Assembly (NCBI GenBank): GCA_963924565.1
Contig: OZ004612.1
Location: 28,706,001 to 28,770,000 of the forward strand
From: Ascidiella aspersa
Taxonomy: Eukaryota
Direction of reading: 5' to 3'
DNA length: 64,000 bases
The position numbers and the translations under genes are program-made. The notes below the pieces were generated by a model. The model had not been told where the DNA came from. It searched no databases and saw only the letters and a list, made by a program, of their open reading frames with translations. Positions 36,901 to 61,694 of the stretch are shown in pieces. Each line of letters begins with the position of its first letter. The first letter of the stretch is position 1.

Positions 36901-37101
36901 AAAATCGCCTTGAAACCGGGAGGAAATGTGCCAGGGATGTCTATATACGATGACCCAGACGCGAATCACGGCTATGTGCAAATGGCATCTCGTCCAGGTC
37001 CCAGTTCTAAGCCTCTACAGGTCGATGAAGCTGGCTACTTAGTTGTCAACGGGTCGCCAGCCAAGCCAGAATATATCAGCTTTGCGCAAATCAAGCAGTA
37101 A
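30955..37101 (+). CDS. Receptor R1: signal peptide, CUB-like Cys domain, Thr-rich stalk, TM, long tyrosine-motif tail (463 aa)
   Basis: Exons 30955-30991, 31998-32213, 32959-33399, 33752-33863, 34473-34607, 35181-35315, 36786-37101 total 1392 nt in frame. Signal MAKALWIGLLMTGGFLLVRG; TM LAVFLLAASLAFAVCFGLCSCTFVFLF; tail motifs EYVN, IYDDP, GYVQM, GYLVV, EYISF. Confidence 0.85.
31281..31471 (-). mobile_element. tRNA-derived repeat, partial, in R1 intron 1
   Basis: TAGCCTGCAGTGAGGTTCCAACTCACGA, with left terminus TATGTGTTCAAAAACTGTGATTTAGCCCTTCGGAAGCTGCTTT. Confidence 0.65.
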
Positions 37102-42600: not shown

Positions 42601-43946
42601 AAAGAAAAACTTTAGTATGTAAAAATAGGCACATGATTACTAAGGTAAAGAACTCTATAGGCCAGACACGGGTAAACTAATACGGCTCGCGACCCGCATG
42701 TGACATGTATTTTTTGGCTCATTTGGGTAAAGAGTAAAACAAAAATAAAATAAGAGAGGTGCACTAATATATATATATATATATATAAATATATTTAAAG
42801 TATGTTTCTTTTATTAATATATTTTATTGTGACACATATAGAGTATTTTCCCATGGAACCCTGTGATGTAACATTATATATAGTGTTGTTGCTTCAAAGA
42901 ACCAATTCACAACGATATTCGGTTGATGCAATGACTTTTAAGGAAGTCTTTTTTTAAATCCTTAATATTCATTCGTTGTTACTATTTTAAAATTCTACCA
43001 TAGCCTTCACAGCCCACTAAACGTGATTGAACAATTAATAACTTAAATTCACTTCAAGCGGCTGATTAATCTCATAAATTTTAGAATGCGGATTGCGTGC
43101 TAAGAAACAATTACATAAAATATTTCTGACATAGGCTTTTAAGCAATTAGGCTATAGTAGAAGAGACCGTTTCTCTCTCTTAAAACATTTTTAAAATGAC
43201 TGCCAAAACCAACGTCTCACAGTTGGTAGAATTCAACAAACTAAACCAGTGTTTCGTAACCTTTTTCAATTTAGGGCTCAACCAAAGACATTTTAAAAAG
43301 TTGCCGCGCAGAACGAAGCGAGCTCGAATTTTGTTTGAGTACACCAGTATTTCCTTAAATTGCTTGCATATTTTTTCATTACATAGGTTTGATAGTTACA
43401 TGTCTTAAGAGTACTGCGGAATCAATGAACTAAGCCGAATAGAAATGAATATATGTTTAATATATCAAAATTGTTTTTCGTTTGCCCGCGGTGCACATGA
43501 CAACATTCCATGGCGCACCGGTAATTAAGCGCTGAACTGAACTATGAGATAGCAATGTGTGTACAACGAAAGCTATCGCAGACTCACCTAATCTCTCGAG
43601 CAATGATGCGCAAATGATACATAAGCCAAAATCGTTGGGCAAAAAGAAGCTTCAGAAAGGCTAGATCACAATTGTTAACACACATATGTGTGTGCATCTT
43701 TCATTAATTGCAATGTGTGTCTCGATTAGAAATCTCCAAAAAGAGTTGTTATCGGCCCAAAGGAGACTAACAAACGACCCAGCTGGACAGCCAAGTCCGG
43801 GTGATATGCGTACAACACCATCTACTACAGGAGCACAAAGCATGGAAGCTGAGCCAAGACGAGGAATGGTCGACAACGTACTTTATGGGTCTGCAAGTGC
43901 TTCAGGCGAACAACGGACCGTGTATAACGAACTGTACAAACTATGA
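39623..43946 (+). CDS. Receptor R2: same ectodomain family; tail with DNVLY and TVYNELY (316 aa)
   Basis: Exons 39623-39668, 40121-40333, 41164-41457, 41541-41597, 42366-42489, 43730-43946 total 951 nt in frame. Signal MFFQLFARTLWILICGMTSMEVLAG; TM IIIGTTLGVLIIFTLGFIAVGAV followed by KYK. The first exon and the small stalk exon are the least certain parts. Confidence 0.85.
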
Positions 43947-46014
43947 AATGTGACACTAACAGCTAGATATGAATTTTTTTACATTATCTTGATTAAGACG
44001 TTTCGAAAGAAACACACATTAACTAAAGATGAAACAAGGTCGTATCGAAACGTCATATTCAAGATAATGTCGATCTACTCGACCTTTTGGCTTTAAAATT
44101 CATTATCAAGCTACAACACAGATCCGTGCATAGTGTAGCTGACATCAAAAGCTTTTTTGATTTTGTTAATTTCGTTTTTAATTTTAAGAATCTGTTGTTT
44201 TTCTTGATCTTGTAAGTGAACTGTTTCAAATTTTTACTTTTTCAGTTTTTGTAGCTTAGTTTTATGTTCTTATTATCTTGTTGTTTTTCTTGGTTTTACT
44301 TGGTTAATTATTTCTTTGTCAACTATACGTTATCAGTGTTATTACAGTCTGTATAAGAGATAGAACAAATGGCAAAATGTGTTATTACCGACACGATAAA
44401 TGTTTCGTATATGTGTCAAGGCTGTCAATGTGTGACCACAAGGTTGCCCGCTGTTAAATATAAAATTTGTTTCATTATTTGTATTTTTTTAATATGTTCG
44501 ATAGAAAAGAGGTGACTGGAAAATTATGTTACATATTGCTTGATACATGCAATTTTAAACTAAATGTTGAGCACGACAATTACAGCGTTACTTCAGGCCA
44601 AATTACACCATTCTACATTGTTAGTTCGTTTGGGCCAAAAAAAGTAAAGTCGTGTTACGTGCTTAATTAGCACTACAAAATTATCACCGGTTGCTAATTA
44701 CGCCGACTGTAAATTCTAACATTCATTATTAATTTAGCGCCTTTGTTTTTAAATGTAGGGCTAGGAATTAGGTTTTCACATTTCGAGACATGTATAATTG
44801 TATATTAATGTAATATTCTTGTGCGCTGTGGTGTTCGCCGTTAATTGGACTTTAGACATGTTTTTTCCTGTCTCCAAACATTTCTGCAAATTTCACGATC
44901 ATTTATCGCTTGTTTTCCGGCGCGGTTTAACTTCTCACTAAAAGGTCCGCCCAATGTTATCTTTCCACGAAACGGCCGCCCTGTAAGGCGGGCCTGGGGT
45001 TTCCGGGAGCGCGTCGGTTCCCGTGGAAAGGAGTTTTGTTTTAGCGTATATTACGAGCGGCTGACCGCCTACAGCTCGATAGACGTCTGGGTGTAGCCTT
45101 GTGAAATTAGCGAGTAAAACTTTAAGTTTCATTATGCTCTGTCTGTCGCTTTTGTAAGTAATTGTGTGTGTCCAAGTGTCATTATTGTTTGTGGTGTGGT
45201 AATATTCTACTCTTGCAACCAATACATCTGTACATTGGGTTTTCTTGTTGTGGTCTTTAATATAAGTTCTCTTTGGTAGGTTATTTATTGCCCGAAAATA
45301 AGGACTCACAGCGACTTTACAGGAGGCCTAGGTAATTTTCTAGAATTACTAGTAAAGTCGTAACAGTCGTGTATTACCAAAAATGACAGAACACAAATCT
45401 CTTGTAAACCAGGAACTGAAACAATTAGCATGTTTTAAGATTTCATAACAGGATCTTAGTCAGACCGCGTACCATTGAGCTATACGCGGAACTGCCGAAT
45501 ACACAAGTTTAAAATAAACGCAAGTTATTTTAAACATGAATAGCCTGTCACTCCATTTCTTGCTCACTCCCACGAAGCGCGAAAAAAATTCCCTTTATTC
45601 GGTTAAATAGACAACATTTTAATTTAGTACAAGACGCGACGCATTGATTGGAAAAATGCACATTTTTCATTTTTTCAGCGTTTATCTTGTTTCAAAAGTG
45701 TTACTAATAAAACAATGGCCTTAAGGCCTGAGTCGGAACCAGCAATAATCCATAACTAAACCAAACGAAATCGAGATATTTTAAAAACTAAGTGCAACAT
45801 GAACGTAAGGGCCACATAACACTGGGTAAAGAGCCGCATGTGGCTCGCGAGCAGTAGTCAACGTCAAATCAAAGCCCTCAAAATGTTTTGAGGTCACGAC
45901 AAACGACTAAAATAACCCGTGGTCGTTTTTCGGTTTCACATTATTCGGCTAAATGACAAAATCACATGTGGTGGTATATGCTTTCCCTATAACTTCCTAC
46001 ATTAGGGTCTAAAG

Positions 46015-46449
46015 CAGGGGTTCCCAAACTTTTTTGGTCTGTGGCCCAAATGTCTATTTAAAAGCGATTCGTGGCCCACCACGTGGTACTTCTATGAAAT
46101 ACAAGCCCAAAAAACACAATAAAAAACAAGCCAAAAAAACAAGCAAACCGCAATTAAAATAAAAAAAAAACGCAAACTCAGAAAAAAACAAGCTCAAATT
46201 CCCTTGAAAACCGCAAGGTTGGCAATTGCTGCTCACCCACTTTGAACTGCCATCTCCAACACAGCAGCTAAAACCCATTTTTAGGAGACAATGACCTTTT
46301 TTGCTATATAATGATTGCTTTTCAAAACAAAGCGCATACTATCTACTGTATAAATATACAGTATAAATCTGTTCAAATGGCTCTGTGGCCCATTGAAAAT
46401 GTCTTGGTGGCCTAGTACTGGGCCATGGCCCACAGTTTGGGAACCACTG
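46015..46449. mobile_element. hAT-type MITE
   Basis: TIR CAGGGGTTCCCAAACT / AGTTTGGGAACCACTG with a perfect 8-bp TSD GTCTAAAG. A decayed homolog lies at about 9500-9815. Confidence 0.88.
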
Positions 46450-46793
46450 GTCTAAAGCGAGTTGTGTAGGACTTGTGCTGTTCAAAAAACCCACATAAAG
46501 AAGCGAGACAGTTTTTGAATACGTGTGTTTATATAGTACACTTCTTGATTACAATTAAATCTTTATCGCATTGCTCGTCGCCGCACACTGCCATTAACTA
46601 TTTTTTCCCCTCATTGTTATTACCTTATATCGCACTATTATTGGCAATTCGTTGCTATGGCGGAAAAAGAATTCAAGCAAATTTGTTTTACGCTAAACAT
46701 ACAGAACATTTTTTTATACGAAATAAATTGTAAAAAAGATTCATGTAAAATCAAACAAAAGGTAAAGGTTGTGTGTAGTCAAACACATTATAG

Positions 46794-47263
46794 CAGTGAT
46801 TCTCAACATTTTTTTTCACTGCGTACCACCTCGAGCTTCCATGATCTTGTTGCGTACCAACAAAATGCCGAAAAACTGAACTTTACTCAAAATGTATATA
46901 GGATTATTAACAGGGGTGGATTAACTTAGTTCGGCCGGAAATTTCAAAACAAATGCGGCCCACTACTCTCAAAAAAGTTTCCCTGTTTTAACTTGCAAGA
47001 TACTGGTAGTCAAGTTTTGTGATTCTTTGTTGTTTTGCTATGATGTCATAAAATAAATTTGCATAGATGTTCCGGAAAGATAATAGTTCCTATCGTTAAA
47101 GAGGCATAAAATATTTAACTATACAATCATTACAATGAATTTTAGTTTATTACAATAAAAAAAATGCTTAATCTTTTGGTACAACTGTAATTTTACTTAA
47201 AAACATACTGCGTACTGCGTACCACCCAAAATGACTTCGCGTACCACAGGTTGAGAACCACTG
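46794..47263. mobile_element. hAT-type MITE
   Basis: TIR CAGTGATTCTCAAC / GTTGAGAACCACTG, TSD CATTATAG/CGTTATAG (7/8 match), subterminal GCGTACCA motifs. Confidence 0.8.
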
Positions 47264-48232
47264 CGTTATAGCGAATATCTGTTCCAAACAAAAAAATCTA
47301 GGTTCGTTTAAAATAGCTTTACACGGCCCGCGAGTTTAGAAGCGCTGCTATAACGGATTTCCTTTATTGGACAAAGTTGAGCGAAGGAGCAAAGCCAAGC
47401 CAGCCATTTGTAAACCAACAGTTTACCGGTCATTTTAGAGCTATAAACAGTGATGGATTCAAACAGGCACAGTAATCTAGACCAGTGATCAATAAACTTG
47501 TTTCATAAAATGCCGTATAAATATAAGGCCTTACGAAGTCAAATTATTAAAAGTATTCACGACCGCGGGCTGGAAATAAATATTTGTGTCGAAGTTTATT
47601 AACCTAATGCTCGTTAAACCAGGGACAATAAATAACTATTTAACAAAATTGTAGTGCGAGAATTAAGCGAACTTAACGATTAGATAACGATTACAGCAAC
47701 AGTATTCTACAAATCGGGATGTTGGCCTTCGAAAAGATATTTTATGAAAACGTACAGTTGTTTGACTCATTGGGACACTTTATATGGTTACATAAATATC
47801 TATATTTTATAAAACAAAACCTTACATTCTTTAACATGTGACCCAGAAATTTTAAATATGATTCTATATTCTTTGACAGAAGAGTGTTTTAAAAGTAGAC
47901 TCTCGAAAGTTCGTTTCTCTTTTTCGCTTAAGTCGTTTGTGTTTTCGAGAGATCTTGTTGACTTAAAATAAAACTTCGTTACACCCGTCATTTCAATACT
48001 TGGTTTCCGACTTGTTGAACGCGGGCGTGATGTTGCAAATCAACTCCCAACTATTAAAGCAATAGCGATATATGGCACGACTTTACTTAGTTGTGCTCTG
48101 AATCACTGAACTTAGCCGGAAGCCTCCGACAGAAAAAACGAATCAGTCGATCAAGATGCAAGCAAGGCCAGTCAAGAAAAACAACTAGCCTGAAATGAGG
48201 TTGAAACGCACGAACTTCGGGCACCTTAGCTC

Positions 48233-48607
48233 TAGAGATCGACCGATATCGATAATATACCTGAAATATACCCGATACCTGAAATACCGATACCCGATAC
48301 CGATACCCGATTTTTTACATTTTGGAACCGATACCCGATACCGATTTTTTACATTTTGGAACCGATACCCGATACCGATTTTTATATACCCTATTAAACT
48401 ATTATTTTACATATTAACTTGACCTGATGCTAAAACCAAATTTTTTTAATAAAAAAATTGATAAGTTGTTTGTTGTACAGGAAAAACGATATCATATTTT
48501 GGTACTAAAAATATAAGTACCGGCCTACATTTACCTATACCGATATATCGGTAAAAGCCAACTATCGGCCGATATTATCGGTAAACCGATATATCGGTCT
48601 ATCTCTA
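48233..48607. mobile_element. MITE with internal CCGATAC repeats (relatives near 32820-32925, 42080-42205, 60460-60565)
   Basis: TIR TAGAGATCGACCGATAT / ATATCGGTCTATCTCTA with tandem CCGATAC(C) units. Confidence 0.75.
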
Positions 48608-48623
48608 CTTTAATCAAGTATAG

Positions 48624-49059
48624 CAGGGACGGCGAACCTTTTTATCGCTGGGGTCACAAACACGCATTACTCCTTACAAAATGCGCAAGTGGGTCATATA
48701 TTTAATTATTTGCTAATTGTGTGCGAAACACTGCTGTGCGGTATTTTAAGTGTTATTGCCTGGGTTGGTAATTCAAGGTTATTGACTGATTTCCAAATTC
48801 TGATTCCCATGTATATTAAGAAGCTAAATAGTTAACAAATGCTGCAGATTTTTTTATGGGATTACAGGAGTTCAGAAGAAAGCTTTTCAGCACGATTTAT
48901 TGGCTAAACCTGGGTTTTAGGAACTTTTAGTCTGCGAACTCTTAATTTCCCTTAAAGCGGTGGTCGGCAAACTTTTTGCGTCGCGAAAAGACAAGTGGGT
49001 CATTAAAAATCTGTGGTGGGTCACTTTGTGACCCGCGGGATAGTGGTTCGCTATCCCTG
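48624..49059. mobile_element. hAT-type MITE
   Basis: TIR CAGGGACGGCGAACC / GGTTCGCTATCCCTG, TSD AAGTATAG/AAGTATGG (7/8 match). Confidence 0.78.
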
Positions 49060-49725
49060 AAGTATGGACTGTGTTCCAAAATTATGCAAACGTGACAAAA
49101 ATAACCCCCAAAACAAGTGATTTCTTGAGCCCTGATTCTTCTGGTTTACACTAAGTCATAAAGCGACGTTTCGGCAGCAGTTATCAATCCATCTATTTAT
49201 AAAAAAAATATAAGCAATATATTTTACGTGTTAAAATAATAGAGAAAAGGCACTGCAAATATTTAAAAAATATACTTCACGTCTCTTCAGTGAGGATACG
49301 TGATTTCGGTTGTTGTGGTTATAACTGGACAAATTTACCTAAAATATTTAACCGTGCCACTATACGTGATCACAGTCTGTATAAGAGATAGAACAAAAGG
49401 TAAAATCTGTTCTTACCGAAACGGTAAATGTTTCGTATATGTCAAGGCTGTATACTTCACGTCTCTTCAGTGCGGAAGGCTGTTTGCTACAACGTTGGGC
49501 AATGATTCAAGTTACAAAACATGTACTTACTCACGGTGGATGTTGTTAGTCAGCGCTTAGGGGTTTTAAACGCACACTGCGTTCGTAATTGTGCGCAAAC
49601 GCCTTCGTCACTTGAATGTCATGGTAAAATTACGACCGCACACTGACATACCTTATACTGGTTGTTAGGATTGTATTTAAAAGAGAAGGACTGCTGTTGA
49701 TGAAGATTTTCTGATAAGCTACTAA

Positions 49726-52700
49726 ATGCATTGGTTCAAGTTTCACTTTGTTTTGCTGAACTTTTTAGTGCTGAATACCGTTCTGTACCTGACGTGCGCT
49801 GTCGGCTGCCAGGTTGAATTTTCAAGTAAATCTGGAACGATTGCCTATGGAAGAAGCTTCCGCAGTTGTAAACAAAAGTGTAGCTGGATATTTTCCTACA
49901 ATAGTAGTGGAGAAGTTGCTTTTCGACTAAAGTTTCTTCTTAGTGAGGGGAATGCAAAACGAGACGAATCGGTCACTTTACCAGACGGTGAGTATTTTGG
50001 TAATTCACACTTTGACATCAGGGATTTATATAAAAATACGATTTTTTTTCAGTAAGACAGGATCAGTGCAATAGTTTCTTGGAAATATAGTGACATGTGA
50101 ATGGGGTATTCTGAAGAAAACAATATGATTTTGCGTTTGATTTATCTAAATGGATTTAAATACAGTAAGGGTTGCATTCGGGTAGAATGGAATATTTCAT
50201 AAGCTGTAAACAGCCTATATAAAAGTCTCACGTATAACTTTAATCATTGCTTCTATGATGATTCATTTGTCCATCATCATTAAACAAATCGTTTGTAGCA
50301 TCTTTTGCGATAACAATCCATATCTACCCTATACATATGCCGAAACTTGGCTGGTTTAATTCTTGGTTAGTTGCAGAAATATACAGCTATTGTTTCGGGT
50401 AGGTTCGGTTTTGCCGGAAAAAACGATCAACAGCACTTCGAAGTGGTGTGCCGTGTACGTAAAAGCACCGGGCAGTCAAAATACTTCTTGCGTTGAGAAT
50501 GTGACAATCGCCAACATATGCGACCAAGCCACAGTGCGCAGTCAACAATGGCCACCGACCATTACAACTCATGTTTGGTCTTACACAATGCAAGTGGACT
50601 ACGATTTTGTCGACTGTAAAGCTTGGACAACAACCACAACGGCCAATGAAACACATACCGCGTCAACAACAAGAACAACGAAGGTGGCGACAAATCAGAC
50701 TGTCTTATACGAAACAACAGGTGAAGTATTAATAAAAATTAACGCGGTGTAGCAATAGTAGAGCTTCCTAAACATTTTAGTCTGCAAACCCTTTTACTTT
50801 GTAATAACTATTCGCAACCCTTCGAACTATGATAACATATTATTTCATAATTTCTAGTTTCACGCGTATTTGTTGAGTTCTGTGCAACTCAGTTGTCAAT
50901 TGAGTTTTATTGGTTTAGAAATTTGCATAACGAAAATTAAAAAAAGCCCAACTCATTTATGTTTAGATGTAACATTCGTTTCTTTTGATATGAATTACTC
51001 GCAATTCATCAAGCTCATTGCGCGATCCTAGTCTAGGAAGCCCTATAGCCTGTACAATTTCGCAAGTTACATACGACGCATCAACCAGTTATTCGCGGTT
51101 CTTATGTTCACTTTGTTCTCGTTTATAGGATTCACAATGGTCGATTACGTTTGCTATAGTCGCCGATTCTCGTATAGGTTCCCATTTAAATTCTTATGCT
51201 TTTCTATAATAAATATAGACAATAGAGACTGTGACAGCGCAATTGCAATTGATATGTTTTAACAAATCCCCGTTGCAAATAAAATGTTGCGTTATGCAAG
51301 CTGCATACTATTGTTGGCTGTAGTGTTACATTTACTGTAACTGGGCTATTTGCTTAAAGCAGGACGTTTGTCTAGTCAAAAGTGATTTATAGGCACCGAA
51401 CTTTTAAAATTCCAGGGCGTTATTTTCCAGAATCTAGACAGTGCAAAATTACTTATATATAAATAAGATAAAAAATGTGAGCTCTTAGATAGCAGCTGTT
51501 TCATGTTATTACTGTAGTTTGTAGATTTTATGAACTCTTGCCTATAATTGGTAATAGTAAAATGAAATATTCTGTGTCTAACTGTCCAGCCATCCCACAA
51601 TATGTCTATATACCTACATGAAGTGATCTTTATCAATAATACTGTTTTTAACCGGTCGAGTCGAGCATTAGCACAATGATTAATCGTTTTTTTAACACCA
51701 GGATTCTTTAGCGCTGAGGTTACTACGTCAAGGAATTCCCCGAGAAACAGATCGAAAGTGGTTGCACAAGAAACCGTTGGACGAAACCTGACAGCGGTGT
51801 CTGTTGTGTTGGCTGTGCTGTTACTCATCGCACTCTTGGCCTTTTTGGCTGTTCTTTTTAAGTACAGGTACAAACCTATGTGTCGCCATAATACTTCCAT
51901 CTGGTTAACTTTGACGTAGAAATCTCATACTAATTTATGACTTGGTTACCTTGAGATAAACTGTAAGGACTGGCGATACCATTTCGGATAACTAATATGA
52001 TTGAAGATTGCTGATCTACAATTTCGTGACGAAATTTATTGACTTGATTTGTAGAATTATACGAATTAAAACTTAAAAAGCAATGCGAAAATGTGTTGTG
52101 AGTTTTCAAATCGTCCCGTATAGTTTAAATTTTCATCAAAGTTTAGTTTAAACCCGACAAACTTTGTAACAAAACTGCGTGTTTTATAGTTTTTAGATAT
52201 CTGTATTTAGAAAATATACCCTGGACCGGAAAAACTTACTTCGCGGACCTTAGTTTCCAATGATAAGAACGTTATTCGTTTTCTAACTGTATACATATCA
52301 GATGTACCACAGTAACAAACAAACTTCTAATTCCAAATGTAAAATTGTTCTTCCAGCAAAATTTGTTAAATTACTAATGTTTCGACCACCACCTATTCGG
52401 GCTTTCTAAATATCTGTATTTAGAAAATATACCCTGGACCGGAAAAACTTACTTCGCGGACCTTAGTTTCCAATGATAAGAACGTTATTCGTTTTCTAAC
52501 TGTATACATATCAGATGTACCACAGTAACAAACAAACTTCTAATTCCAAATGTAAAATTGTTCTTCCAGCAAAATTTGTTAAATTACTAATGTTTCGACC
52601 ACCACCTATTCGGGCAATCTTCTTCGGTGCAATAAAATTGCAACTCCAGGCAAAAAAGAACAATGCCTAGCAGCATCAGCTTGTAAACAATGTTTCACAG

Positions 52701-53048
52701 CAAAAACTAATTTCAGTTAGGAATAAGTTTTATCCTACATAGAAAATTATTACAACTTGTTTATTGTTTAGAACATTGCAATCAAGAATGGCGAAGAATT
52801 CTGAGAAAAGCCATGCATCAGTCTACGGAAACGACCCTTCATCCGACAACAACATGTACGCAATGGCCACGGCTCCTTCACAAGCGACTAACTCAGTAGC
52901 AAATGGGGAACGAGAAATGGTGGACAACGAACTTTACACCGCCAACGATGTGCGTGAAGAAAAACAGACTGTCTACAACGAACTTTACGCAGCCAACAAT
53001 GTTTTGGAAGAAAAACAGACTGTGTACAACGAACTATACAAAGCTTAG
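49726..53048 (+). CDS. Receptor R3: same family; tail with three NELY repeats (340 aa)
   Basis: Exons 49726-49987, 50403-50720, 51702-51867, 52772-53048 total 1023 nt in frame. Signal MHWFKFHFVLLNFLVLNTVLYLTCAVG; TM LTAVSVVLAVLLLIALLAFLAVLF followed by KYR. Confidence 0.9.
52197..52615. repeat. 206-bp tandem duplication (period 213) in R3 intron 3
   Basis: 52197-52402 is repeated, apparently identically, at 52410-52615. Confidence 0.9.
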
Positions 53049-54512
53049 TTTGCTTGTTTAAATGACATATTCTCAGAACCATAGTGTTCCGTTTAATTTT
53101 TTACCACGTGCCTAAACTATTGTGTTGGGCAAACGACAACGTCCCCAAAGGAGCCATGTGGCCACATATTATGAACTTTACTGAAGTAAACATTGGGTAG
53201 TGAAAGTATTATATCTAAACATCCTTGCAAAATAGTTTTGGTTTGGCTCCAGGAGACATTGGCGTCAGCAGCTTGTTAAAAAATATTTTTTACTTGTTTT
53301 CCTGCTCACTTGGAAATGTATTATAGGTGCAAAAAAGTTCGCCAATTTGTGGAAACAAAAATCACTTAGCGGGAGCACTGTTCAGCACAGCGCACTTGAG
53401 GTCAAAACTTGAAAAAAGAGTGTGTTATTTATTTGTCTTGCTTGTTCATATTTCACTGCTAAATATTTTCGTCCTTATTTTTCCCTTCGCAAACGATATA
53501 CAAAGCTTCCGAAATGAAATCCAGCATAATCATTTCAATACCGCCCACATAAATGGTTCCATACACCACCATTGATTTTAAAGTTTGTATAGAAAGCCAA
53601 TTAACAAATCTTTGGTTGAAATTGCGCAAATTTGTTTGAGCGCGTAATGAAATTGTGTACGTGTTTATAAAATAACGGAATAAAATGTGATAATGTGCCT
53701 ATGGTGGTCCAAAGTTTGAAACAAAATAAGATTGACTTTCATTTGATGATATATTTTGCATAATAATTACAACGTTCCAGCCGATACAAAAATCTATAAA
53801 AACTCTATATACATCGATTTTCGACTTACTGTAACTTTAACGCACTAAATCATGGTGAACTTTTGTTTTAAAGGGGTTTACCTAAATGTTGTAAACAAGT
53901 CAATTTAAAATGACTTAAATCCGAGTCAAATCATGGCAATAAAATGTACGGTCAGATCAAGTCATTTACCTAAATAAAATGTTGAATTATATATTGAAAA
54001 TGTAAACTAGTAACATCCTGAGAGATATTTTGATTAACGAATTGTAACAAACACGTAACAATTACTTAATTCGAAATCAAACTCCTTAACAAGAAAAACT
54101 GGAATAAAAAGACTAAACGAATTTTCTCAAAATTATTTTAAAGCTTTTAAGTCTAAGTAAAATTGATTGCCTCAAAATTGATTTGCGTCAAGTCAAGTCA
54201 TTAAAACGTCAGCACACAATAATATCAAACAAAGGGAACTATAAATACCGTTAACTATTTAAATCCAAGCATTGGAGAAACAAATGGAAGCCTTCTATGG
54301 ATAAGCATTAGACACATGACGTAGTTTAACAGGTTTACATGCGTGATACGTGCATAGTTGCGCGGGTCACTTTATTGTTTGTGTGTAGTAGCTATACCAG
54401 GAAATACTGTCACCAAGCGTTGTTAGCTGTAGACAATAACAAGCGGGTACAACACTGTTTGGCTGTTTTTTTTGTGGACGACTAAATTCGCCGAAGTGTG
54501 ATCAAAGCGGGA

Positions 54513-56356
54513 ATGATTGGTCTCAAGTGGAAAAACGTTTTTCTGAGCTTTCTATTACTGGAAACTGTTTATCAAAGCGTTGTCGGTTGCAAACATGAAT
54601 TCTCTAGTCGATTCGGAAAAATATCTTACAAGGCAGATTATTCATGGCAGAAATGCGACTGGAAATTTACTTACAATGGAAGCAGAAGTGATGTTGTTTT
54701 GGGAATAAAGATTAAGAACATTTGGCTACACAGTGACGAAATAATTACTTTGCCAGACGGTGAGTATGCCAATGTTTTAAATTCTTCCAGTTAATTTGTA
54801 ATCGGACTTTTAAGTTACTCATTTTTTTTTATTTAAATTCAATATTGCATATTACGTTTGCCAACTTAAACATTCGCAAAGTGTGTAAAACTAATGGTTA
54901 GTAGCAGTCCTAAAAATAAATATAGGGTCCGTGAGGTAATCATTTGTTTTAAAAAAGGGTGCTGAAATTAAAACAGGTTGTTAATCACTTGTCTTCGCGT
55001 CTTAGCTCTAAATTACTCATGCAAAAATATCTGAACATTTATTCCATTAAAACCCTAAGCAAATTCAACAAGTGTTTTTATTAAAAGGGAAAGCTATTTC
55101 AACTCGTCTCTGGATTGCTCAATATTGTGGAGTGTTTGTGAAAGAGTTTGGATTACAAGAATCGTGCAACGATGGAGTAAAGTATCCTATAATTTGTGAC
55201 AAGCCGAGCGTTTACAGCAAATCGTGGCCACCCAACATTACAACTAAACTGTATTCTCATGAAATGGAATTAGTTTACGGTTTTTTCGACTGCACAAATA
55301 TTACCACAACCACAACTACAACAACAACAACAGCAAAGGCTACAACAAGGACGTCAACGACAAAAACAGCAACTACAACAAAATCCTCCACAGCAACAAC
55401 GAGAAAAAACGATGTGGAAACGACAACAACAGCGTTTTCAATAGGTAAAAAAATTACAATATTTCTTTGTTGCTTGTACAGTAATGTTTATTTTTTTATT
55501 TCGGCTTTTTGAATGGAAAAACTAGACAAAAAACAAGCTATTTGTTACTTTAATATATTTCCAGGAGTTTTAAGCTCTGAAGTTACTAGGCCAGATACTT
55601 CCCAAAGAAACAACTTTAAGTTTGCGGCGCAAGAAGAAATTGCACGAAATATGACAGTAACAAGCGGTATATTGGCTGCATTACTGCTCATTTCTGTTTG
55701 TGCCTTGGTAGCGGCCTTCATTAAATACAGGTAAATATTTATCCAGCAGTTTTTATGAGGCATGGATAAATTAATTTCATTAAAAAAAAATTAAAAATGT
55801 TGGACACATTTTCCTCCATGGCCTCATTTATTACATAGTCTAATAGAAAATAAGGCCAAAAGAATAGTACATAAACAAATATGCTGTGTATCGTTTTGAT
55901 CTTATCCGATCTTAATCTACAAATATTGTTCAAAGAATATTTACGTAGTAAGAATATCAAATCCCATACAGAAGTAGGTATTATTTTAAATGTTTCGAAT
56001 AACTTTTTATTTATATACAACATGAACTACGTATAAGAACATGAATCAGGAGTTATTCAAAACGGTCACAATGATACCCAAATAGTCCGTCATTCCTACA
56101 AAGTGTATGGGCTTTAATATTCATACTATGTCTTACTACAACCTCCAACCATTATGCTCCAAACCTACATTTGTTTAGAAACTTGAGCAAACAACCGACA
56201 ACGAACGGAAACAACGTTAACGCAATGGTGACAGGTCCTTCGCAAGCAACTTATTCTACGGCATACGGGGAAAGGGAAATGGTCGACAACGAACTTTACG
56301 CAACAAGCAATGCTGGAGAGAAACAGACTGTTTACAACGAGCTTTACACGGCTTAG
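54513..56356 (+). CDS. Receptor R4: same family; tail with DNELY and TVYNELY (315 aa)
   Basis: Exons 54513-54759, 55088-55444, 55565-55730, 56179-56356 total 948 nt in frame. Signal MIGLKWKNVFLSFLLLETVYQSVVG; long Thr stalk; TM VTSGILAALLLISVCALVAAFI followed by KYR. Confidence 0.9.
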
Positions 56357-58057
56357 ATCGCTTGTTTTTATAACACCGATGTGGTATAGGAAAAAGAGTT
56401 ATGAACTGAACAACGCCGGCTTGTAAAAATATATGTGTCATCTTCAGAAATTTTGCGGAGTCGGAAGCTTTTTTGGTTTATGGGCGTAAAAAACATACAA
56501 AGTTTTAATTGTATTTTTAGGAATTTTTCGGCATCTAGTTAAAAAAAATCACTCAAAACGTGCTAAAAGACACCAAAGATACATATAATTTCGCGAAAAC
56601 AAATGCTATTATTCCCAGTCCAATATAGGTAAAAAATATTGTTAGGTAAGGATCCATAGCCACGTACTACTGTAGATTTATCTGCAGACCAGATTATTTT
56701 CATTAAAAGAGTCATAGATATGGAAGTCGCCTAACCTTACACAAATGGCCACAGTAATGTGTAATCTATTATGGAAACTCGATTTTCTTCCACTTTAGTT
56801 CCATTTTATGTATTTTTACTGTGATTCTCTTTTCTACGCCTTTTAAATTGTTTTTAGTTCGCAGTTATGTTGCTGTATAAATATATAAAATCATAAATAT
56901 TGAACTGTTTAAATATTGAGTTAGTGTTTTCCATATATATATATATTAGTGTTTTCCATAATAAGGTGTATTACATTGTTATCATAATCCAGGAATGTTA
57001 AAGTCCGGGACAGTAAAAAAATAAAGTCTTACACTTTTTCCGTTGGTGTGGTAAATCTAAACAAAGATCCTACCAAGGTTGCTGGTACGAAAAGCGCCTT
57101 TATGAGAGATGTCATATCAGGTCAGATAAGTTATAATATCATGTCAATGGAAAATAAATGTATTGCAAATTGCAAATAGCCGTGTAAAATTTGAATGGCT
57201 TTATATGATTTCACCAGCCGCAAATACATTCCAATCAAAAAGCAAATGGAAATCATAAGTGCAAACGATACTTTCAATCCTATTGTTTCGCATTGCATAC
57301 CAAGTGCGGTATTGCAATTGCGGGTAGACAATAAGGAAGTAAGTGTAGTTGGCAGAACTATATTTCGCAATCAATTAAGGACTTTGTTGTGGCTGATATT
57401 GAGCCACATGACGATGACTTCAAGATCTGACACATCTGACAATTCAAAACGTCAGATAGATTAGCATAATGGTTACCGTGACGTTTGGCCTGTGTGTCAA
57501 CGAAATATGCGTGGGCGATTTTAAGTGGCTATACGTATTAAACCGCTGGCTATACATAGATGTGCCACTGCCACATTGGTATTAGACGGGACTACAGCAA
57601 AAATACAGAAATCAGAATAACATGAACGTCGAATCAAAACCAAATCCTAAATAAGAAAACAACGGAAAGGCAAGAAGGACCGTGGTTCTTGAAGTAAAAT
57701 AGCCCGTCATTCCGACAAACATGCAAGGTTAATCAGCCAATAAAATTGGATTAGCTATTTTCTTTCTTTTCAAAATAAAGCACATAAAGACAATATTTAC
57801 TACAACAACTAATGCAAAAGTAACAGCACGAAAACTAATAAACGTTTTGACAACCAGTATTTATAAATCGAAAAAATCGAAAACAACTTTAAATTGTCCT
57901 GGAAGAAGTACAGCACAAAGCTTAACTAAATAACAAAAACCGTTGGGTCGTTGCAGGAAACAAATAAGGAATGTGAAGTTATTTATCTGTTAAGAGGATG
58001 CTTACAACAAAATAAAGGGAAACAACCAGAAAACCATTATATAACAGTACTTGTGGC

Positions 58058-58558
58058 CAGGGCTGGGGAGCCACCGTAAAATAGCATTAGCTCCGGCTCC
58101 AGCTCCGGAGCCATCAGGCAATTATTAAATGGCTCCGGCTCCAGCTCCGGAGTAGTAAAACTCATATCCTTTGGCTCCGGCTCCAGCTCCGGAGCCATCA
58201 AACACACACCCAATGACTCCGGCTCCAGCTCCGGTGCCACCAGTCACTTATTCAATGGCAAGTTTTAAAAATTGCTTTTGTCTCACTAACGTTGGAGATG
58301 GAACAAAATATAATTTCTTAGCTTTAACACCACAAATTGAAAAATGGCTCCAGCTACACAAAAATAATAAAAAGGGCTCCAGCTCCGGCTCCAGCTCCGG
58401 CTCCAGCTCCACAAAAATAATAAAAATGGCTCCGGCTCCGGCTCCAGCTCCACAAAAATAATAACAATGGCTCCGGCTCCGGCTCCGGCTCCGGCTCCAG
58501 AGAAAATGCTTAGCTCCGGGCTCCGGGCTCCAGCTCCGGCTCCGGCTCCCCAGCCCTG
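58058..58558. mobile_element. Young hAT-type MITE filled with (GGCTCC/AGCTCC)n
   Basis: Perfect 15-bp TIR CAGGGCTGGGGAGCC and perfect 8-bp TSD CTTGTGGC (58050-58057, 58559-58566). Confidence 0.92.
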
Positions 58559-59655
58559 CTTGTGGCAGGACTTGGTAAAACGCGGCGGAAGGCACAGATT
58601 TCATATTCGAATTATTTTTACAAATTTGGATTGGTTTAATCACACAAATTATTTTCTTTGCAGATTCTTATTTCGTCAAAATTGACATAAGCTAATCTTC
58701 CATTATAATTGCTTATCGCAAATTGCCGTGATTATGAGCAATGTGTATATCAGCTAACTTAACAAATTAAGATCACCATCGCTAGAAAGTTATTGAAATA
58801 GGCCAAAATATTTTTAAAGGGTGCTCAGGTTTTGTACGAAAGCTCAGGTTTTGTACGACTAACGACTGTCGTCTTATTGAAAAATATGACCTATTCTACC
58901 AAGTGCAGTTACGCGTCTGCCACGCTTTCTATTCAAAATATTTGGATATGGTTATTTCCATAATTAAAGTAACATTACTTGATTTCAGCGTGAAAGGATT
59001 TGGTAAACTATTTAAAAAAATTGCCAATGAAAAAATATATTTGCAATGAAAACGCGGAAGAGTTGTGCCCAATAATACTGTAGGTTTTTAATCGACTAAG
59101 ACTTCTATATCGATTACAAAACTGGGAATAGAAAAAAATGCATTTGGTTTTCAAACGATAGTTTATTTCTTCTTATTGTATGGGATATGCATATGTTTTG
59201 GGATTTTATGAAGTCGTTAAAGGTACAATTCGTCAGATAGAGCGACATATACGCTACACGGAAGAGACTGACTGGCTTTAGCCTTGCAAAGTACGTGAAT
59301 CTGCAAACGAAAATGAGTCAACCTATTTAATCGTTAGTAGCAGTGTATAATTGGAAACGTCATATTGTTTTACCAATATCCTGAAACCACAATCGCCGGA
59401 GCAGCTACAATGGCGTCAGTTTGAAAAAGAAAAAGCCGAACGTAGTAAGAATATCAAAGCCTACACAGAAGTAATGTGCTACCTGCCTCTACTTCTATGT
59501 GGGCTTTGATATTCTTAGTACGTCTTACTACAATCTCCAGCTATTATGCTCCAAAAAGCCTACACTGTTTTGTAGTTGTACTTGTTAACGGTTTTGTAGA
59601 TTTACTTGTTTAGCTTTGTAGGATTTTTTTTGTGTAACTAAAGTGCTAATTCCTG

Positions 59656-61694
59656 ATGAGTTTGCTCAACCTGAAAACCGTTTTGTTGAATCTTGTGTTG
59701 CTGGACACAGCTTATCACCAGGCATGTGCCGCTGCCAGCCGCAAAACTCTTTCCAGTAGATTTGGACTGATTACATACAGTACATATAGGAATGGTTGGA
59801 AGACGTGCGATTGGATATTTAATTACAACGACAGCAGTAACGATGTTGTATTGGGAATAAAGTTTCAGAAGAGCTCAAGGCTTTACAACACCCAATCAGT
59901 TACACTCCCAGACGGTAAGGATGATGCTTATTGGTATATACCGCTACAGTATGGCTTTTAATTTTCATGCATTTTTTTCGTTTCAAATATAAACCGTAAA
60001 GCATACTCGTTCGAGCCGTTGAAACATCAACCGTTTATTAGAAAAAATGATTATATATACCAAATTAAAGTGAATTTATTTGTATTTATCACAGGTACGA
60101 TTCTAACTCGTAACACCCTCAGTTCAAGATTTCCTTGGTGTGAAGCGTACGTGAAAAAATCGGGTTCATGCCTTAAGAACGTAACCTACCCAAGCATTTG
60201 CGACAAAGCAGCGGTTTCCATAGAAACTTGGCCGCCAAAGATTACTACTAAAATGTACTACTACTCAACTAGGCGGCACCACTACTCAATGGAAGTAGCA
60301 TACAGCTTTTTTGACTGCTCGAAAAGCACCACTGCAACAACCACAACAACAAGAAAACTAACAACGTCTACCACCTTGAAGTCAACACCTACAGAGAATG
60401 TCAAGAAACCAACAGGTTGGAAAAATACGTAACGGCGTTATTTAAAAGAATGTTGCAGACAGGGATGTCCGATAGTATCGGATCGGACACGATGTCCATG
60501 CACATAGTGATATCGGTACCCGTCCGATATTAGTGTGGTATCGGTGCCGATCCGATACCAAATTACCATAGAAATTTAAACCATGATTTGCGAGGTAACG
60601 AAGTTATTTCTACATTTAGAGGTAAATTTATAAAAAAATGGTATGCAAACGACTAAACTTCTTAACGCTTAACCACATTTTCACCCAATAACCTAAAAAA
60701 ATCGATTGAATGTTTTAATTTTATTTATTAGAAAACAACTCCAAAAATGCACAAGAATCAATTGGGCGAAGTATGTCAGTGGCGACTGGTGTTCTTGCTA
60801 CACTACTGCTCATCGCTGTTGGTGCTTCTGTAGTGGTGGCCGTCAAGTACAGGTACAAACCGTATTCCCGACCAGGCAATCCTGAACGGACCTGGTTCAT
60901 TGACTCTAAATCTGTCGTAATTCAGATAGTAATTAATAAAAATTGGGTTAGATCGATTTTGGGGGGCTACGGACGTGGCGCACTTGGTGTAAAGTATTGC
61001 GGAGACCAAACACGATTGGGTGACCGATAATTATGATTTTGTAATATTTACGAATAACTTTTTAATGAATAGTGTAACAACTCTTAACTCCACAACTTAC
61101 GATTGTTTTGCTGTGTTGTTTTTTGGTACGGAATTAAGGGGGTTCGTCAGATTCAGATTCAGATTCAATTTATTTTTGTGCATGTTTGCAAACATCGAAA
61201 AAAACAAAATAACATAAATAATAACACAAGGACAGCGAAAGGACCATTCGGTCATCGAGTCGAGCTGCCCCTCAAAAATAAATAAATTTAGTGGCAATAT
61301 TGAAAGTTACAATCATTGGAAACAAAAAGTGCGTAGATAAAAAGTATGTAGATTTTAACGGTTTTATATAAATTTTTGAAATAAGAAATGGATACGAAAA
61401 AGCAATGTAAAACTAGCAAAAAACGATAAGGTCAGAAGGTACTATACAACGGTTACGTACTGCAGGATTTATTATCGTCAAGAGATGGAAACTAAAATTA
61501 AAACTATACAATTAATTATATTCTTCAGAAAATTGAAGCTAAGAAATCCCGCAAACAACCAACCAGCAGCCAACGGAAACGGCCGTTCAGTCGACTACAA
61601 TGTGTACACAATGGCCACAGCTCCTTCGCAATCGAATAATCCAGCAGCAAATGGGCAACGAGAAATGGTAGACAACGAACTGTACACAATGTAG
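59656..61694 (+). CDS. Receptor R5: same family; tail with VYTM and a single DNELYTM* (288 aa)
   Basis: Exons 59656-59914, 60095-60415, 60732-60852, 61529-61694 total 867 nt in frame. Signal MSLLNLKTVLLNLVLLDTAYHQACAA; TM VATGVLATLLLIAVGASVVVAV followed by KYR. Confidence 0.9.
61147..61400 (-). mobile_element. 3' end of a CR1/L2-type LINE or its SINE partner
   Basis: The minus strand reads a stem-loop GGGGCAGC...GCTGTCCT, then AATAAA and a (TGAATC)n microsatellite tail. The upstream boundary is approximate. Confidence 0.55.

What the first reader, a model, noticed from the sequence alone, without database searches (positions are those of the whole stretch)
43730..61694. Signalling dose varied by copy number of an NxLY / TVYNELY module in the R2-R5 tails
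The tails end in MVDN(E/V)LY plus 0-2 EK/QxTVYNELY units: R5 has one NxLY, R2 and R4 have two, and R3 has three. TVYNELY overlays an NxxY motif (the PTB/FERM-binding class) on a YxxL. YNEL equals the first half of two CD3-zeta ITAMs, and TxYxxL is close to the ITSM consensus TxYxxV/I. These motifs are far better conserved than the ectodomains, which suggests variable recognition coupled to a common adaptor. Which adaptor binds, and whether the outcome is signalling or endocytosis, is not decidable from sequence.
Basis: partly seen in the sequence, partly recalled or inferred. Interest (0 to 1): 0.75.

Follow-up and report, generated by a model that had tools for sequence, protein, structure and literature searches.

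The report
Repeated NxLY docking motifs in receptor tails
Four neighbouring genes for small membrane receptors end in one, two or three copies of a short tyrosine motif that most resembles the known NPxY-type uptake and docking signals, but whether the number of copies matters is untested.

Summary
R2-R5 are four-exon type I membrane-protein genes. Their last exons end in MVDN(E/V)LY plus 0, 1 or 2 TVYNELY units: R5 has 1 unit, R2 and R4 have 2, R3 has 3. There are 4 VDNxLY sites where 0.06 are expected and 4 TVYNELY sites where 0.00 are expected.

- The conserved core is V(-5)-x-N(-3)-x-L(-1)-Y(0) with E-K/R upstream, and +1 to +3 vary. That is PTB/FERM-type (NPxY/NxxY) logic, not SH2 logic.
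- The same unit occurs as EKETVANPLY (true NPxY) or EVDNVLY, 2-5 times, downstream of C-type-lectin and SUEL-lectin exons elsewhere in this genome.
- It also occurs in crab, urchin, amphioxus, locust and acorn-worm receptors.
- The extra Tyr that makes YNEL is confined to the R array and one foreign protein, so the ITAM/ITSM overlay is a local add-on. No canonical ITAM exists.
- R3's third unit is a 51-bp tandem duplication.

Dose dependence, the adaptor and expression remain unproven. RNA showed trace reads on R3 and none on R4.

The scan noted the same 51-bp NPxY unit array before on other DNA (s1-805313).

The parts
43730..43946 (+). R2 last exon, the cytoplasmic tail. It has 2 units: VDNVLY at 43869-43886 and TVYNELY at 43917-43937. 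The stop codon is at 43944-43946.
   Evidence: acceptor ag|A, phase 2
40108..42489 (+). R2 upstream exons. The first ectodomain exon ends at 40333 (donor G|gttagt); its start and signal peptide are unresolved. Exon 41164-41457 is the ectodomain second half. Exon 42366-42489 is the TM exon ending KYK.
49726..51867 (+). R3 exons 1-3: 49726-49987 (signal peptide plus first half of the Cys-containing domain), 50403-50720 (second half plus Thr-rich stalk), 51702-51867 (TM, ends KYR).
   Evidence: intron phases 1, 1, 2 with GT/AG sites
52772..53048 (+). R3 last exon. It has 3 units: VDNELY at 52920-52937 and TVYNELY at 52968-52988 and 53019-53039.
   Evidence: An X1 DNA contig spans 52586-53702 with no 51-bp indel.
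52924..53044 (+). 51-bp (17-codon) tandem repeat inside the R3 tail, 2.4 copies, 84% matches. This duplication made the third unit.
   Evidence: TRF, score 172; units 2 and 3 share 42 of 51 nt. Both changes in the 33-nt EEKQTVYNELY part are synonymous; 7 changes lie in the 18-nt linker.
54513..55730 (+). R4 exons 1-3: 54513-54759, 55088-55444, 55565-55730.
56179..56356 (+). R4 last exon. It has 2 units: VDNELY at 56282-56299 and TVYNELY at 56327-56347.
59656..60852 (+). R5 exons 1-3: 59656-59914, 60095-60415 (donor gttgga, weak beyond GT), 60732-60852.
61529..61694 (+). R5 last exon. It has 1 unit, VDNELY at 61668-61685, followed by TM and the stop codon.

Best explanation
R2-R5 belong to a tandem array of lineage-specific type I membrane receptors. 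The array continues beyond the window as R6-R8, and a larger sister array lies about 0.3 Mb upstream.

Each gene has four parts: a signal peptide with a roughly 135-aa Cys-containing domain split over two exons, a Thr-rich stalk, a TM exon, and a short tail exon. The tail is probably disordered.

The tail is built from 16-17-residue units with the core E-(K/R)-x-x-V-x-N-x-L-Y. I read this core as a proline-less member of the Phi-x-N-P-x-Y / NxxY class of linear motifs. Such motifs are bound through residues N-terminal to the tyrosine by PTB domains (Dab, ARH, Numb, GULP/CED-6 type without phosphate; Shc, Dok, FRS2 type with phosphate) or by FERM-F3 domains (SNX17, talin, kindlin).

The most likely outcome is adaptor-driven clathrin uptake or recycling, or engulfment signalling, of a ligand-binding receptor.

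Units are gained and lost by in-frame tandem duplication of 48-51 bp in the last exon, which gives 1-3 docking sites per tail here and 2-5 in sister families. More units would raise avidity for the adaptor.

In R2-R4 and R7 the distal units also acquired a Tyr at -4. This creates a YxxL/YxxPhi site overlapping the NxLY, a possible second SH2 or AP-2 input specific to this sub-array.

Shown: the sequences, gene models, duplication, conservation pattern and distribution of the unit. Inferred: cytoplasmic location, binding partner, uptake or signalling outcome, and any effect of copy number.
For: 1. Motif anatomy. In the 12 R-array units, V at -5, N at -3, L at -1 and Y at 0 are fixed. Position -9 is E in 9 and position -8 is R or K in 11. 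Positions +1 to +3 vary. In 4 of 7 R-array tails only two residues follow the last Tyr before the stop codon: R2-R5. R6 likewise ends two residues after its only Tyr. An SH2 +3 pocket could not be filled there. The scan's pattern required a hydrophobic residue at -5, N, a hydrophobic residue at -1 and Y, so what is informative is the choice of V and L and the -9/-8 and +1 to +3 columns.

2. Purifying selection on the core. The 8 window units use 4 different Val codons and 3 Leu codons. Paralogues have pS 0.34-0.83. After R3's duplication the motif part has 2 changes, both synonymous, while the linker has 7.

3. The canonical proline form is in the same genome. EKETVANPLY occurs 3-5 times, along with VVDNPLY and IVNNPLY, in tails on C2. 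EVDNVLY occurs 3 times with EVANPLY on C7. The pattern EKxxVxNxLY gives 78 genome hits against 28 for the reversed control, clustered at C2:6.03-7.04 Mb, C6:28.39-28.79 Mb and C7:27.41-27.54 Mb. Lectin_C and SUEL_Lectin exons lie upstream on the same strand.

4. Other phyla. A profile of 10 tails found 18 proteins at E <= 0.001 among 1.84 billion, and 17 of the 18 carry 3 or more units. They include receptors of Eriocheir, Branchiostoma (F5/8-C), Schistocerca (PEAR1-like EGF), Strongylocentrotus (Sushi/CTLD), Lytechinus and Ptychodera. The crab gene's isoforms hold 4, 5, 6, 7 and 9 units of 17 aa.

5. Precedents read in papers.
- The mannose receptor's FENTLY mediates clathrin internalisation (PMC8551360, passage).
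- SEZ6L2 has NPLY with Dab2, and MRC1 has FENTLY (PMC5297682, table passage).
- RET has a C-terminal NKLY, and the SNX17 FERM domain binds NxxY (PMC10754285, passages).
- NPXY/NXXY are PTB ligands with specificity set by flanks (PMC4985636, passages).
- Draper, MEGF10 and CED-1 have NPxY with GULP/CED-6 (PMC8092387, passages).

6. Candidate readers exist in this genome. There are 9 PID and 7 IRS-type PTB matches. They include X11-like, Fe65-like, Numb, a GULP-like exon and talin F3.
Against: - R2-R5 lack the proline at -2 (E in 10 and V in 2 of 12 R-array units). NxxY without Pro binds many PTB domains less well.
- No binding, phosphorylation or trafficking data exist.
- RNA support is minimal. 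In about 6% of one RNA run, R3 exons have depth 0.4-1.9, R4 has none, and no splice joint was seen.
- No orthologue of R2-R5 from another species was found, so conservation between species is shown for the motif class, not for these genes.
- Linkage of lectin exons and tails into one gene is inferred from strand and distance only.
- Copy-number differences could be neutral.
- The resemblance of motif arrays across phyla could be convergence.
Confidence: 0.5

Rival explanations
1. The functional element is the YNEL tyrosine. TVYNELY would be an ITAM-like, hemITAM-like or ITSM-like SH2 docking site for Syk/Shark, SHP2 or a SAP-type adaptor, and the number of such sites sets activating or inhibitory strength.
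For: - It is exactly conserved in 4 of 4 distal units in the window, in R7, and as IVYNELY in one foreign protein, P0018.
- R3 has two YNEL sites.
- YNEL also occurs in CD3-zeta ITAMs; this is recalled and not checked by any search.
Against: - The Tyr at -4 is absent from every first unit (MVDNxLY), from R5, R6 and R8, and from almost all related units. It is present in 1 of 25 upstream-array units, 0 of 7 SUEL units and 0 of 12 CTLD units.
- R2 and R4 have a single YxxL. R3's two lie 13 residues apart, outside the 6-8 spacing of the ITAM consensus; that consensus is recalled.
- There is no acidic DEDG-type hemITAM prefix.
- Conservation lies N-terminal to the invariant Tyr, not C-terminal to it.
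Confidence: 0.2
2. The motif is functional, but its copy number is a neutral by-product of slippage or unequal crossing-over in a repetitive, disordered last exon. One unit suffices and no dose effect exists.
For: - R5 and R6 have a single unit in otherwise comparable tails. Only R5's gene model was checked.
- R3's extra unit is a plain 51-bp tandem duplication.
- In the C2 lectin array, units within a tail are nearly identical at the DNA level, and neighbouring paralogues have 3, 3, 4 and 5 units. This is VNTR-like behaviour.
Against: - After duplication the R3 motif part kept only synonymous changes while the linker diverged, so the extra unit has been maintained, not merely tolerated. The sample is small.
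- Multi-unit arrays recur in several phyla.
Confidence: 0.3
3. R2-R5 are silent or decaying copies, and the tails have no present function.
For: - There are no RNA reads on R4 and only trace reads on R3 in the one RNA run sampled.
- R2's signal-peptide exon was not found.
Against: - R3, R4 and R5 have open exons with GT/AG sites and matching phases 1, 1, 2.
- dN/dS is 0.2-0.6 in all exon classes despite saturated dS.
- The motif core is invariant.
- Only about 6% of one run of unknown tissue was read.
Confidence: 0.1

Closest known systems
Mannose receptor (MRC1/CD206) FENTLY internalisation signal
   Same: Both are Phi-(D/E)-N-x-L-Y in the short tail of a type I lectin-type receptor. The motif has the same length and spacing and also lacks proline. 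FENTLY drives clathrin uptake (PMC8551360, passage; PMC5297682, table passage). In this genome the same unit follows C-type-lectin exons.
   Different: The mannose receptor has one copy and F at -5. Here the motif is V at -5, present 1-3 times (up to 5 in sister genes) with an E-K/R prefix. The R2-R5 ectodomain has no Pfam match.
LDL-receptor family FxNPxY signals (LDLR, LRP1, megalin) and SEZ6L2 NPLY
   Same: Both are Phi-x-N-x-x-Y read by Dab2/ARH-type PTB adaptors. Several family members carry 2-3 copies (recalled). SEZ6L2's signal is NPLY with Dab2-mediated internalisation (PMC5297682, table passage). Sister tails here read VANPLY or VDNPLY.
   Different: R2-R5 have E or V in place of Pro. 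The units are tandem duplicates of one 16-17-aa module rather than separate sites.
Draper / CED-1 / MEGF10 / Jedi-1 (PEAR1) engulfment receptors
   Same: Their tails combine an NPxY site for GULP/CED-6 with a YxxL or ITAM site for Shark/Syk (PMC8092387, passages). TVYNELY overlays the two motif kinds. One profile hit is a locust PEAR1-like EGF receptor with 5 such units.
   Different: The ectodomains are unrelated, there is no canonical ITAM here, and in TVYNELY the two motifs overlap instead of lying apart.
RET C-terminal NKLY (Tyr1062) multi-docking site
   Same: It is a proline-less NxLY at the receptor's C-terminus (PMC10754285, passage). That it docks Shc, FRS2 and Dok PTB domains when phosphorylated is recalled, not read here. 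One allele of R3's third unit reads NKLY (G>A at 53031 in X1).
   Different: RET is a kinase that phosphorylates its own site. R2-R5 have no enzyme domain and would need a separate kinase.
CD3-zeta and other multi-ITAM chains
   Same: Both embody the idea that signal strength scales with the number of repeated tyrosine motifs in a tail. The YNEL tetrapeptide is shared (recalled).
   Different: ITAM spacing and SH2-type C-terminal specificity are not met here.

Membership tests
NPxY / NxxY (Phi-x-N-x-x-Y) PTB- and FERM-binding motif class | Asn at -3 and Tyr at 0 | tested here: met
   Met in 8 of 8 units in the window.
NPxY / NxxY (Phi-x-N-x-x-Y) PTB- and FERM-binding motif class | Hydrophobic residue at -5 | tested here: met
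   Val in 12 of 12 R-array units.
NPxY / NxxY (Phi-x-N-x-x-Y) PTB- and FERM-binding motif class | Pro at -2 (strict NPxY form) | tested here: not met
   Position -2 is E in 10 and V in 2 of 12 R-array units. Pro is present in 9 of 12 distinct C2 lectin-array units and 2 of 7 C7 units. R2-R5 therefore belong to the looser NxxY form.
NPxY / NxxY (Phi-x-N-x-x-Y) PTB- and FERM-binding motif class | Specificity carried by residues N-terminal to Tyr, in a cytoplasmic tail | tested here: met
   Positions -9 to -1 are conserved and +1 to +3 are variable. The units lie after the TM exon in the gene models. Topology is inferred, not measured.
NPxY / NxxY (Phi-x-N-x-x-Y) PTB- and FERM-binding motif class | Binding to a PTB or FERM-F3 domain | not testable with these tools
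   Only the presence of candidate readers in the genome was shown.
ITAM | Two YxxL/I sites separated by 6-8 residues (consensus recalled) | tested here: not met
   R2 and R4 have one YxxL and R5 has none. R3 has two YNEL sites with 13 residues between L and the next Y.
   TVYNEL has T at -2 but L at +3. The tyrosine is not conserved in related arrays.
YxxPhi AP-2 sorting signal | Tyr with a bulky hydrophobic residue at +3 | tested here: inconclusive
   YNEL fits the pattern in R2-R4. R5 has no such site. The invariant Tyr is followed by T/A/G/K-x-x with no conserved hydrophobic residue.
CUB domain (label used for the ectodomain in earlier notes) | Match to the CUB family profile or fold | tested here: not met
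   Pfam found no CUB hit at E <= 1 on 6 ectodomain exon translations. Profiles of exon 1 and exon 2 found no PDB chain at E <= 10.

The most novel reading that the evidence does not exclude
Tandem arrays of a Phi-(D/E)-N-x-L-Y unit could be an undescribed tail module that is widespread in invertebrates and tunable by copy number. The module would be attached to many kinds of recognition heads: lectin, Sushi, EGF, discoidin, and the unclassified R domain. Unit number would change through 51-bp duplication or, as in the crab, through isoforms with 4-9 units, and would set how strongly a receptor engages one shared PTB adaptor. The R2-R4 branch would then have turned the unit into a dual PTB-plus-SH2 switch by gaining a second tyrosine.
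Probability: 0.25. Interest if true: 0.7.

Novelty: new variant of a known kind. Interest (0 to 1): 0.45.

Why it matters
If the units are PTB or FERM docking sites, this genome offers a natural series of receptors that differ mainly in the number of identical docking motifs: 1-3 here and 2-5 in the lectin arrays. That would make a simple system for testing whether motif multiplicity tunes uptake or signalling.

It would also tie large, fast-evolving arrays of recognition receptors in a chordate relative to one shared intracellular adaptor. The same unit in crab, urchin, amphioxus, locust and acorn-worm receptors hints at an old and overlooked tail module.

If copy number is neutral, the finding is an ordinary NPxY-type tail in a lineage-specific gene family.

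Tried and rejected
- **Ectodomain identity.** Pfam on single exon translations gave nothing relevant. PDB profile searches with the exon 1 and exon 2 alignments gave nothing at E <= 10.
- **Orthologues.** The word search with the R3 tail found none; 3 candidates, none scored. With P0018 it found only P0018 itself. With the C7 stalk-TM-tail exon it found nothing at E <= 0.001. The big profile search found the motif class in other phyla but no protein of this genome and no clear R orthologue; the best score was 65 bits. Of its 18 hits I set aside P0010 (no unit), P0011 (odd repeat, no receptor features) and P0017 (looks bacterial) as doubtful.
- **ITAM reading.** Rejected on spacing and on the lack of conservation of the -4 Tyr.
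- **Expression.** One RNA run gave no splice joints. This is no evidence of silence.
- **Copy-number polymorphism.** An X1 contig keeps three units in R3. The X2 contig breaks inside the repeat, so nothing can be said for X2.
- **Literature.** Searches found no paper on tunicate receptor arrays with such tails. One search was swamped by OCR noise, and of its 20 listed papers none contains VDNELY, DNELY, DNVLY or ANPLY. Supplementary files were not consulted and could hold relevant motif tables.
- **Species identity.** The 'sea squirt' label comes from earlier scan notes, not from my calls.

Full report
**What is in the window**

The + strand of 40-62 kb holds four similar genes, R2 to R5, each with four coding exons.
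- Exon 1 carries a signal peptide and the first half of a Cys-containing domain. It ends ...LPD-G at a phase-1 donor.
- Exon 2 carries the second half of the domain (WC..YVK....C......C......WPP.ITT) and a Thr-rich stalk, also phase 1.
- Exon 3 is a juxtamembrane and TM exon ending KY(R/K), phase 2.
- Exon 4 is the tail exon.

All junctions of R3, R4 and R5 have GT/AG, and the phases match. R5's second donor is weak beyond the GT. R2's first exon lacks a visible signal peptide, so an upstream exon may be missing. An R1 copy lies at about 32-37 kb with an unrelated tail.

**The observation**

A six-frame scan finds VDNxLY four times and TVYNELY four times in the whole window, all at these ORF ends.

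Shuffle controls give 4 observed against 0.06 expected for VDNxLY (0 of 100 shuffles reach 4) and 4 against 0.00 for TVYNELY. Bare NxLY is common, with 35 hits in six frames, so the signal lies in the extended unit and its position.

There are two unit types.
- The first unit reads (E/Q/R)-R-(E/G)-M-V-D-N-(E/V)-L-Y.
- There are 0-2 distal units reading E-(K/Q)-(Q/R)-T-V-Y-N-E-L-Y.

The counts are R5 = 1, R2 = R4 = 2 and R3 = 3.

**How the number changes**

TRF reports a 51-bp repeat, 2.4 copies and 84% matches, at 52924-53044.

R3's units 2 and 3 share 42 of 51 nt. The 33 nt that encode EEKQTVYNELY differ at two sites, both synonymous. The 18-nt linker differs at seven sites.

R3's two distal units differ from each other at 2 of 33 aligned positions. 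R3 unit 2 differs from R4's distal unit at 4 of 33 (my count on the alignment). This fits a duplication inside R3 after the genes split.

An X1 DNA contig spans 52586-53702 without a 51-bp indel, so three units are present there too. The X2 contig breaks in the repeat.

Alleles in those contigs change positions -2 (E to K in unit 3) and +1 (T to A after unit 1), and one Leu codon synonymously. They do not change N, L or Y.

**Conservation**

- Among R3-R5, amino-acid identity is 39-48% in the ectodomain exons, 49-58% in the TM exon and 55-60% in the tail.
- pS is 0.34-0.78 among R3-R5, and 0.72-0.91 in pairs with R2, so the copies are old.
- dN/dS is 0.2-0.6 where it can be computed.
- The core M-V-D-N-x-L-Y is invariant in 4 of 4 tails.
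- The eight units use four Val and three Leu codons.

The motif is therefore held by selection on the protein, not by recent gene conversion. 'Far better conserved' is true of the core and only moderately true of the whole tail.

**The unit is not special to R2-R5**

A profile of the four tails run on the window's own genome gave 32 matches at E <= 10. G000 is 308.6 Mb, and the window is C6:28706001-28770000.

The array continues beyond the window:
- R6 is near-identical to R5 and has one unit.
- R7 has MVDNVLY plus TVYNELY.
- R8 has IVNNELY.

A sister array at C6:28.39-28.46 Mb, on the minus strand, has 11 tails with 2-3 units by my pattern. Examples are HYGMVDNSIY, MVDNVLY and, at the C-terminus, EKQVVENELYRM.

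Other chromosomes hold tails with:
- EKETVANPLYG 3, 3, 4 and 5 times (C2:6.90-6.93 Mb);
- REIVNNPLY plus EKQNVANILY (C2:6.03-6.25 Mb);
- EVDNVLYG three times plus EVANPLYHL (C7:27.54 Mb).

My automatic count is one too high for three C2 tails, because an intron-encoded FLNxIY just before the exon also fits the pattern. The counts above are read.

The DNA pattern for EKxxVxNxLY gives 78 genome hits against 28 for the reversed control. The hits are concentrated at C2:6.03-7.04 Mb, C6:28.39-28.79 Mb and C7:27.41-27.54 Mb.

Upstream of these tails, on the same strand, lie exons that match Lectin_C (E 1.5e-11, 2.3e-09 and 6e-13) and SUEL_Lectin (5.7e-14). That head and tail belong to one gene is inferred from strand and distance.

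**What the unit looks like**

Over the distinct units:
- Position -5 is V in 12 of 12 (R array), 22 of 25 (upstream array), 7 of 7 (C7) and 12 of 12 (C2).
- Position -1 is L in 12, 19, 7 and 12 respectively.
- Position -9 is mostly E and -8 is mostly K or R.
- Position -2 is E or V in the R array and P in 9 of 12 C2 units.
- Position -4 is D, A, N, E or V. It is Y only in 5 of 12 R-array units and 1 of 25 upstream-array units.
- Positions +1 to +3 show no pattern.

In R2-R6 only two residues follow the last Tyr.

Conservation N-terminal to the Tyr, a hydrophobic residue at -5 and Asn at -3 form the signature of PTB and FERM-F3 ligands, not of SH2 ligands. That signature is established knowledge. 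Passages in PMC4985636 confirm that NPXY/NXXY are the PTB motifs and that the flanks set specificity.

**Other species**

A profile of ten tails, searched against 1.84 billion representatives, gave 18 proteins at E <= 0.001. The best scored 65 bits, and none was from this genome. Seventeen of the 18 carry at least three units. I regard P0010, P0011 and P0017 as doubtful.

Named hits:
- An Eriocheir sinensis uncharacterised receptor with VVENSLYE repeats. Its isoforms hold 4, 5, 6, 7 and 9 units of 17 aa.
- A Branchiostoma F5/8-type-C receptor.
- A Schistocerca PEAR1-like EGF receptor.
- Strongylocentrotus Sushi and Lectin_C proteins.
- Lytechinus proteins with eight or nine (V/I)DNPLYG units.
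- A Ptychodera protein.

In 5 of the 18 hits a crude TM finder places all units after the TM helix. By eye this also holds for the crab and locust proteins.

P0018 is an unnamed ENA protein that was not found in G000. It has VDNILY, EKQIVYNELY and ERQQVVNELY and is the nearest relative of the R units.

**Precedents**
- The mannose receptor's FENTLY mediates clathrin-dependent internalisation (PMC8551360, passage).
- SEZ6L2 uses NPLY with Dab2, and MRC1 uses FENTLY (PMC5297682, table passage).
- RET's C-terminus holds NKLY, and the SNX17 FERM domain binds NxxY cargo (PMC10754285 and PMC9006456, passages).
- Draper, MEGF10 and CED-1 combine NPxY (GULP/CED-6) with an ITAM or YxxL (PMC8092387, passages).

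Recalled, not checked: the LDL receptor's FDNPVY, PTB docking at RET Tyr1062, and YNEL in CD3-zeta.

**Readers in the genome**

PID gave 9 matches and IRS-type PTB gave 7. Best PDB matches name an X11-like, a Fe65-like and a Numb PTB, a GULP-like exon (E 3.3e-06) and talin F3. This shows only that candidates exist.

**Expression**

One RNA run was available, of which about 6% was read. R3's exons have depth 0.4-1.9, mostly with the first mate on the minus strand. R4 has none, and no splice joint reached the listing threshold. This neither confirms nor excludes expression.

**Verdict**

The unit is best read as a proline-less member of the NPxY/NxxY class. It forms a tail module shared by several receptor families in this genome, and it changes in number by 48-51-bp tandem duplication.

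The ITAM/ITSM overlay is specific to one branch and does not meet the ITAM definition.

The dose idea is reasonable and has parallels: 2-5 units in sister arrays and 4-9 in crab isoforms. It is nevertheless untested, and a neutral origin of the number cannot be excluded.

Earlier scan notes had already recorded the 51-bp ETVANPLY array on another chromosome (s1-805313). My reproduce the 5, 4, 3 and 3 units.

Noticed in passing
window 52845-52880, 61620-61650; L032:1410-1619 and 8036-8221; L035: A second conserved tyrosine block, N-x-Y-(A/T/S)-M-A, lies upstream of the first unit. It reads NMYAMATAPSQ in R3, NVYTMATAPSQ in R5 and R6, NLYSMAD in R7, NPYAMADN in R8, and YEMAG in the upstream array. 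The Tyr is replaced by Asn in R4 and the block is absent in R2. It fits no motif class that I could name.
   Followed up: partly
window 55810-56209 (last intron of R4): A very high-copy repeat. The summed contig depth is about 94,000-189,000, against about 50-100 nearby. RNA reads show opposite-strand joints at 55947/56137. It is probably a transposon or hairpin element.
   Followed up: no
window 52190-52615 (last intron of R3): A 213-bp tandem duplication, 2.0 copies, 99% identical.
   Followed up: no
window 58090-58554: GCTCCG-type micro- and minisatellites with periods of 6, 12, 41, 42 and 53 lie between R4 and R5. They create long Ala-Pro ORFs on both strands that are probably not genes.
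   Followed up: no
window 53031, 52938, 52861: There are allelic differences in the R3 tail in public DNA contigs. G>A at 53031 turns NELY into NKLY in unit 3 (X1). A>G at 52938 changes the residue after unit 1 from T to A (X1, X2). An in-frame AAT insertion follows 52861 (X2). N, L and Y of the units are unchanged.
   Followed up: partly
G000:C6:28773926-28774198 (L031) against window 61380-61691: R6's tail exon is almost identical to R5's. The last residue is I instead of M, and the upstream intron-encoded stretch is the same. This points to a recent duplication of R5 just beyond the window.
   Followed up: partly
window 36500-37300 (R1 tail): R1's last exon has no NxLY unit.
   Followed up: no
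P0003, P0020-P0023 (Eriocheir sinensis LOC126997834): Predicted isoforms differ only by whole 17-aa VVENSLYE units (4, 5, 6, 7 and 9). This could be alternative splicing of unit-sized exons or an artefact of a polymorphic repeat. The period equals the 17-aa unit here.
   Followed up: partly
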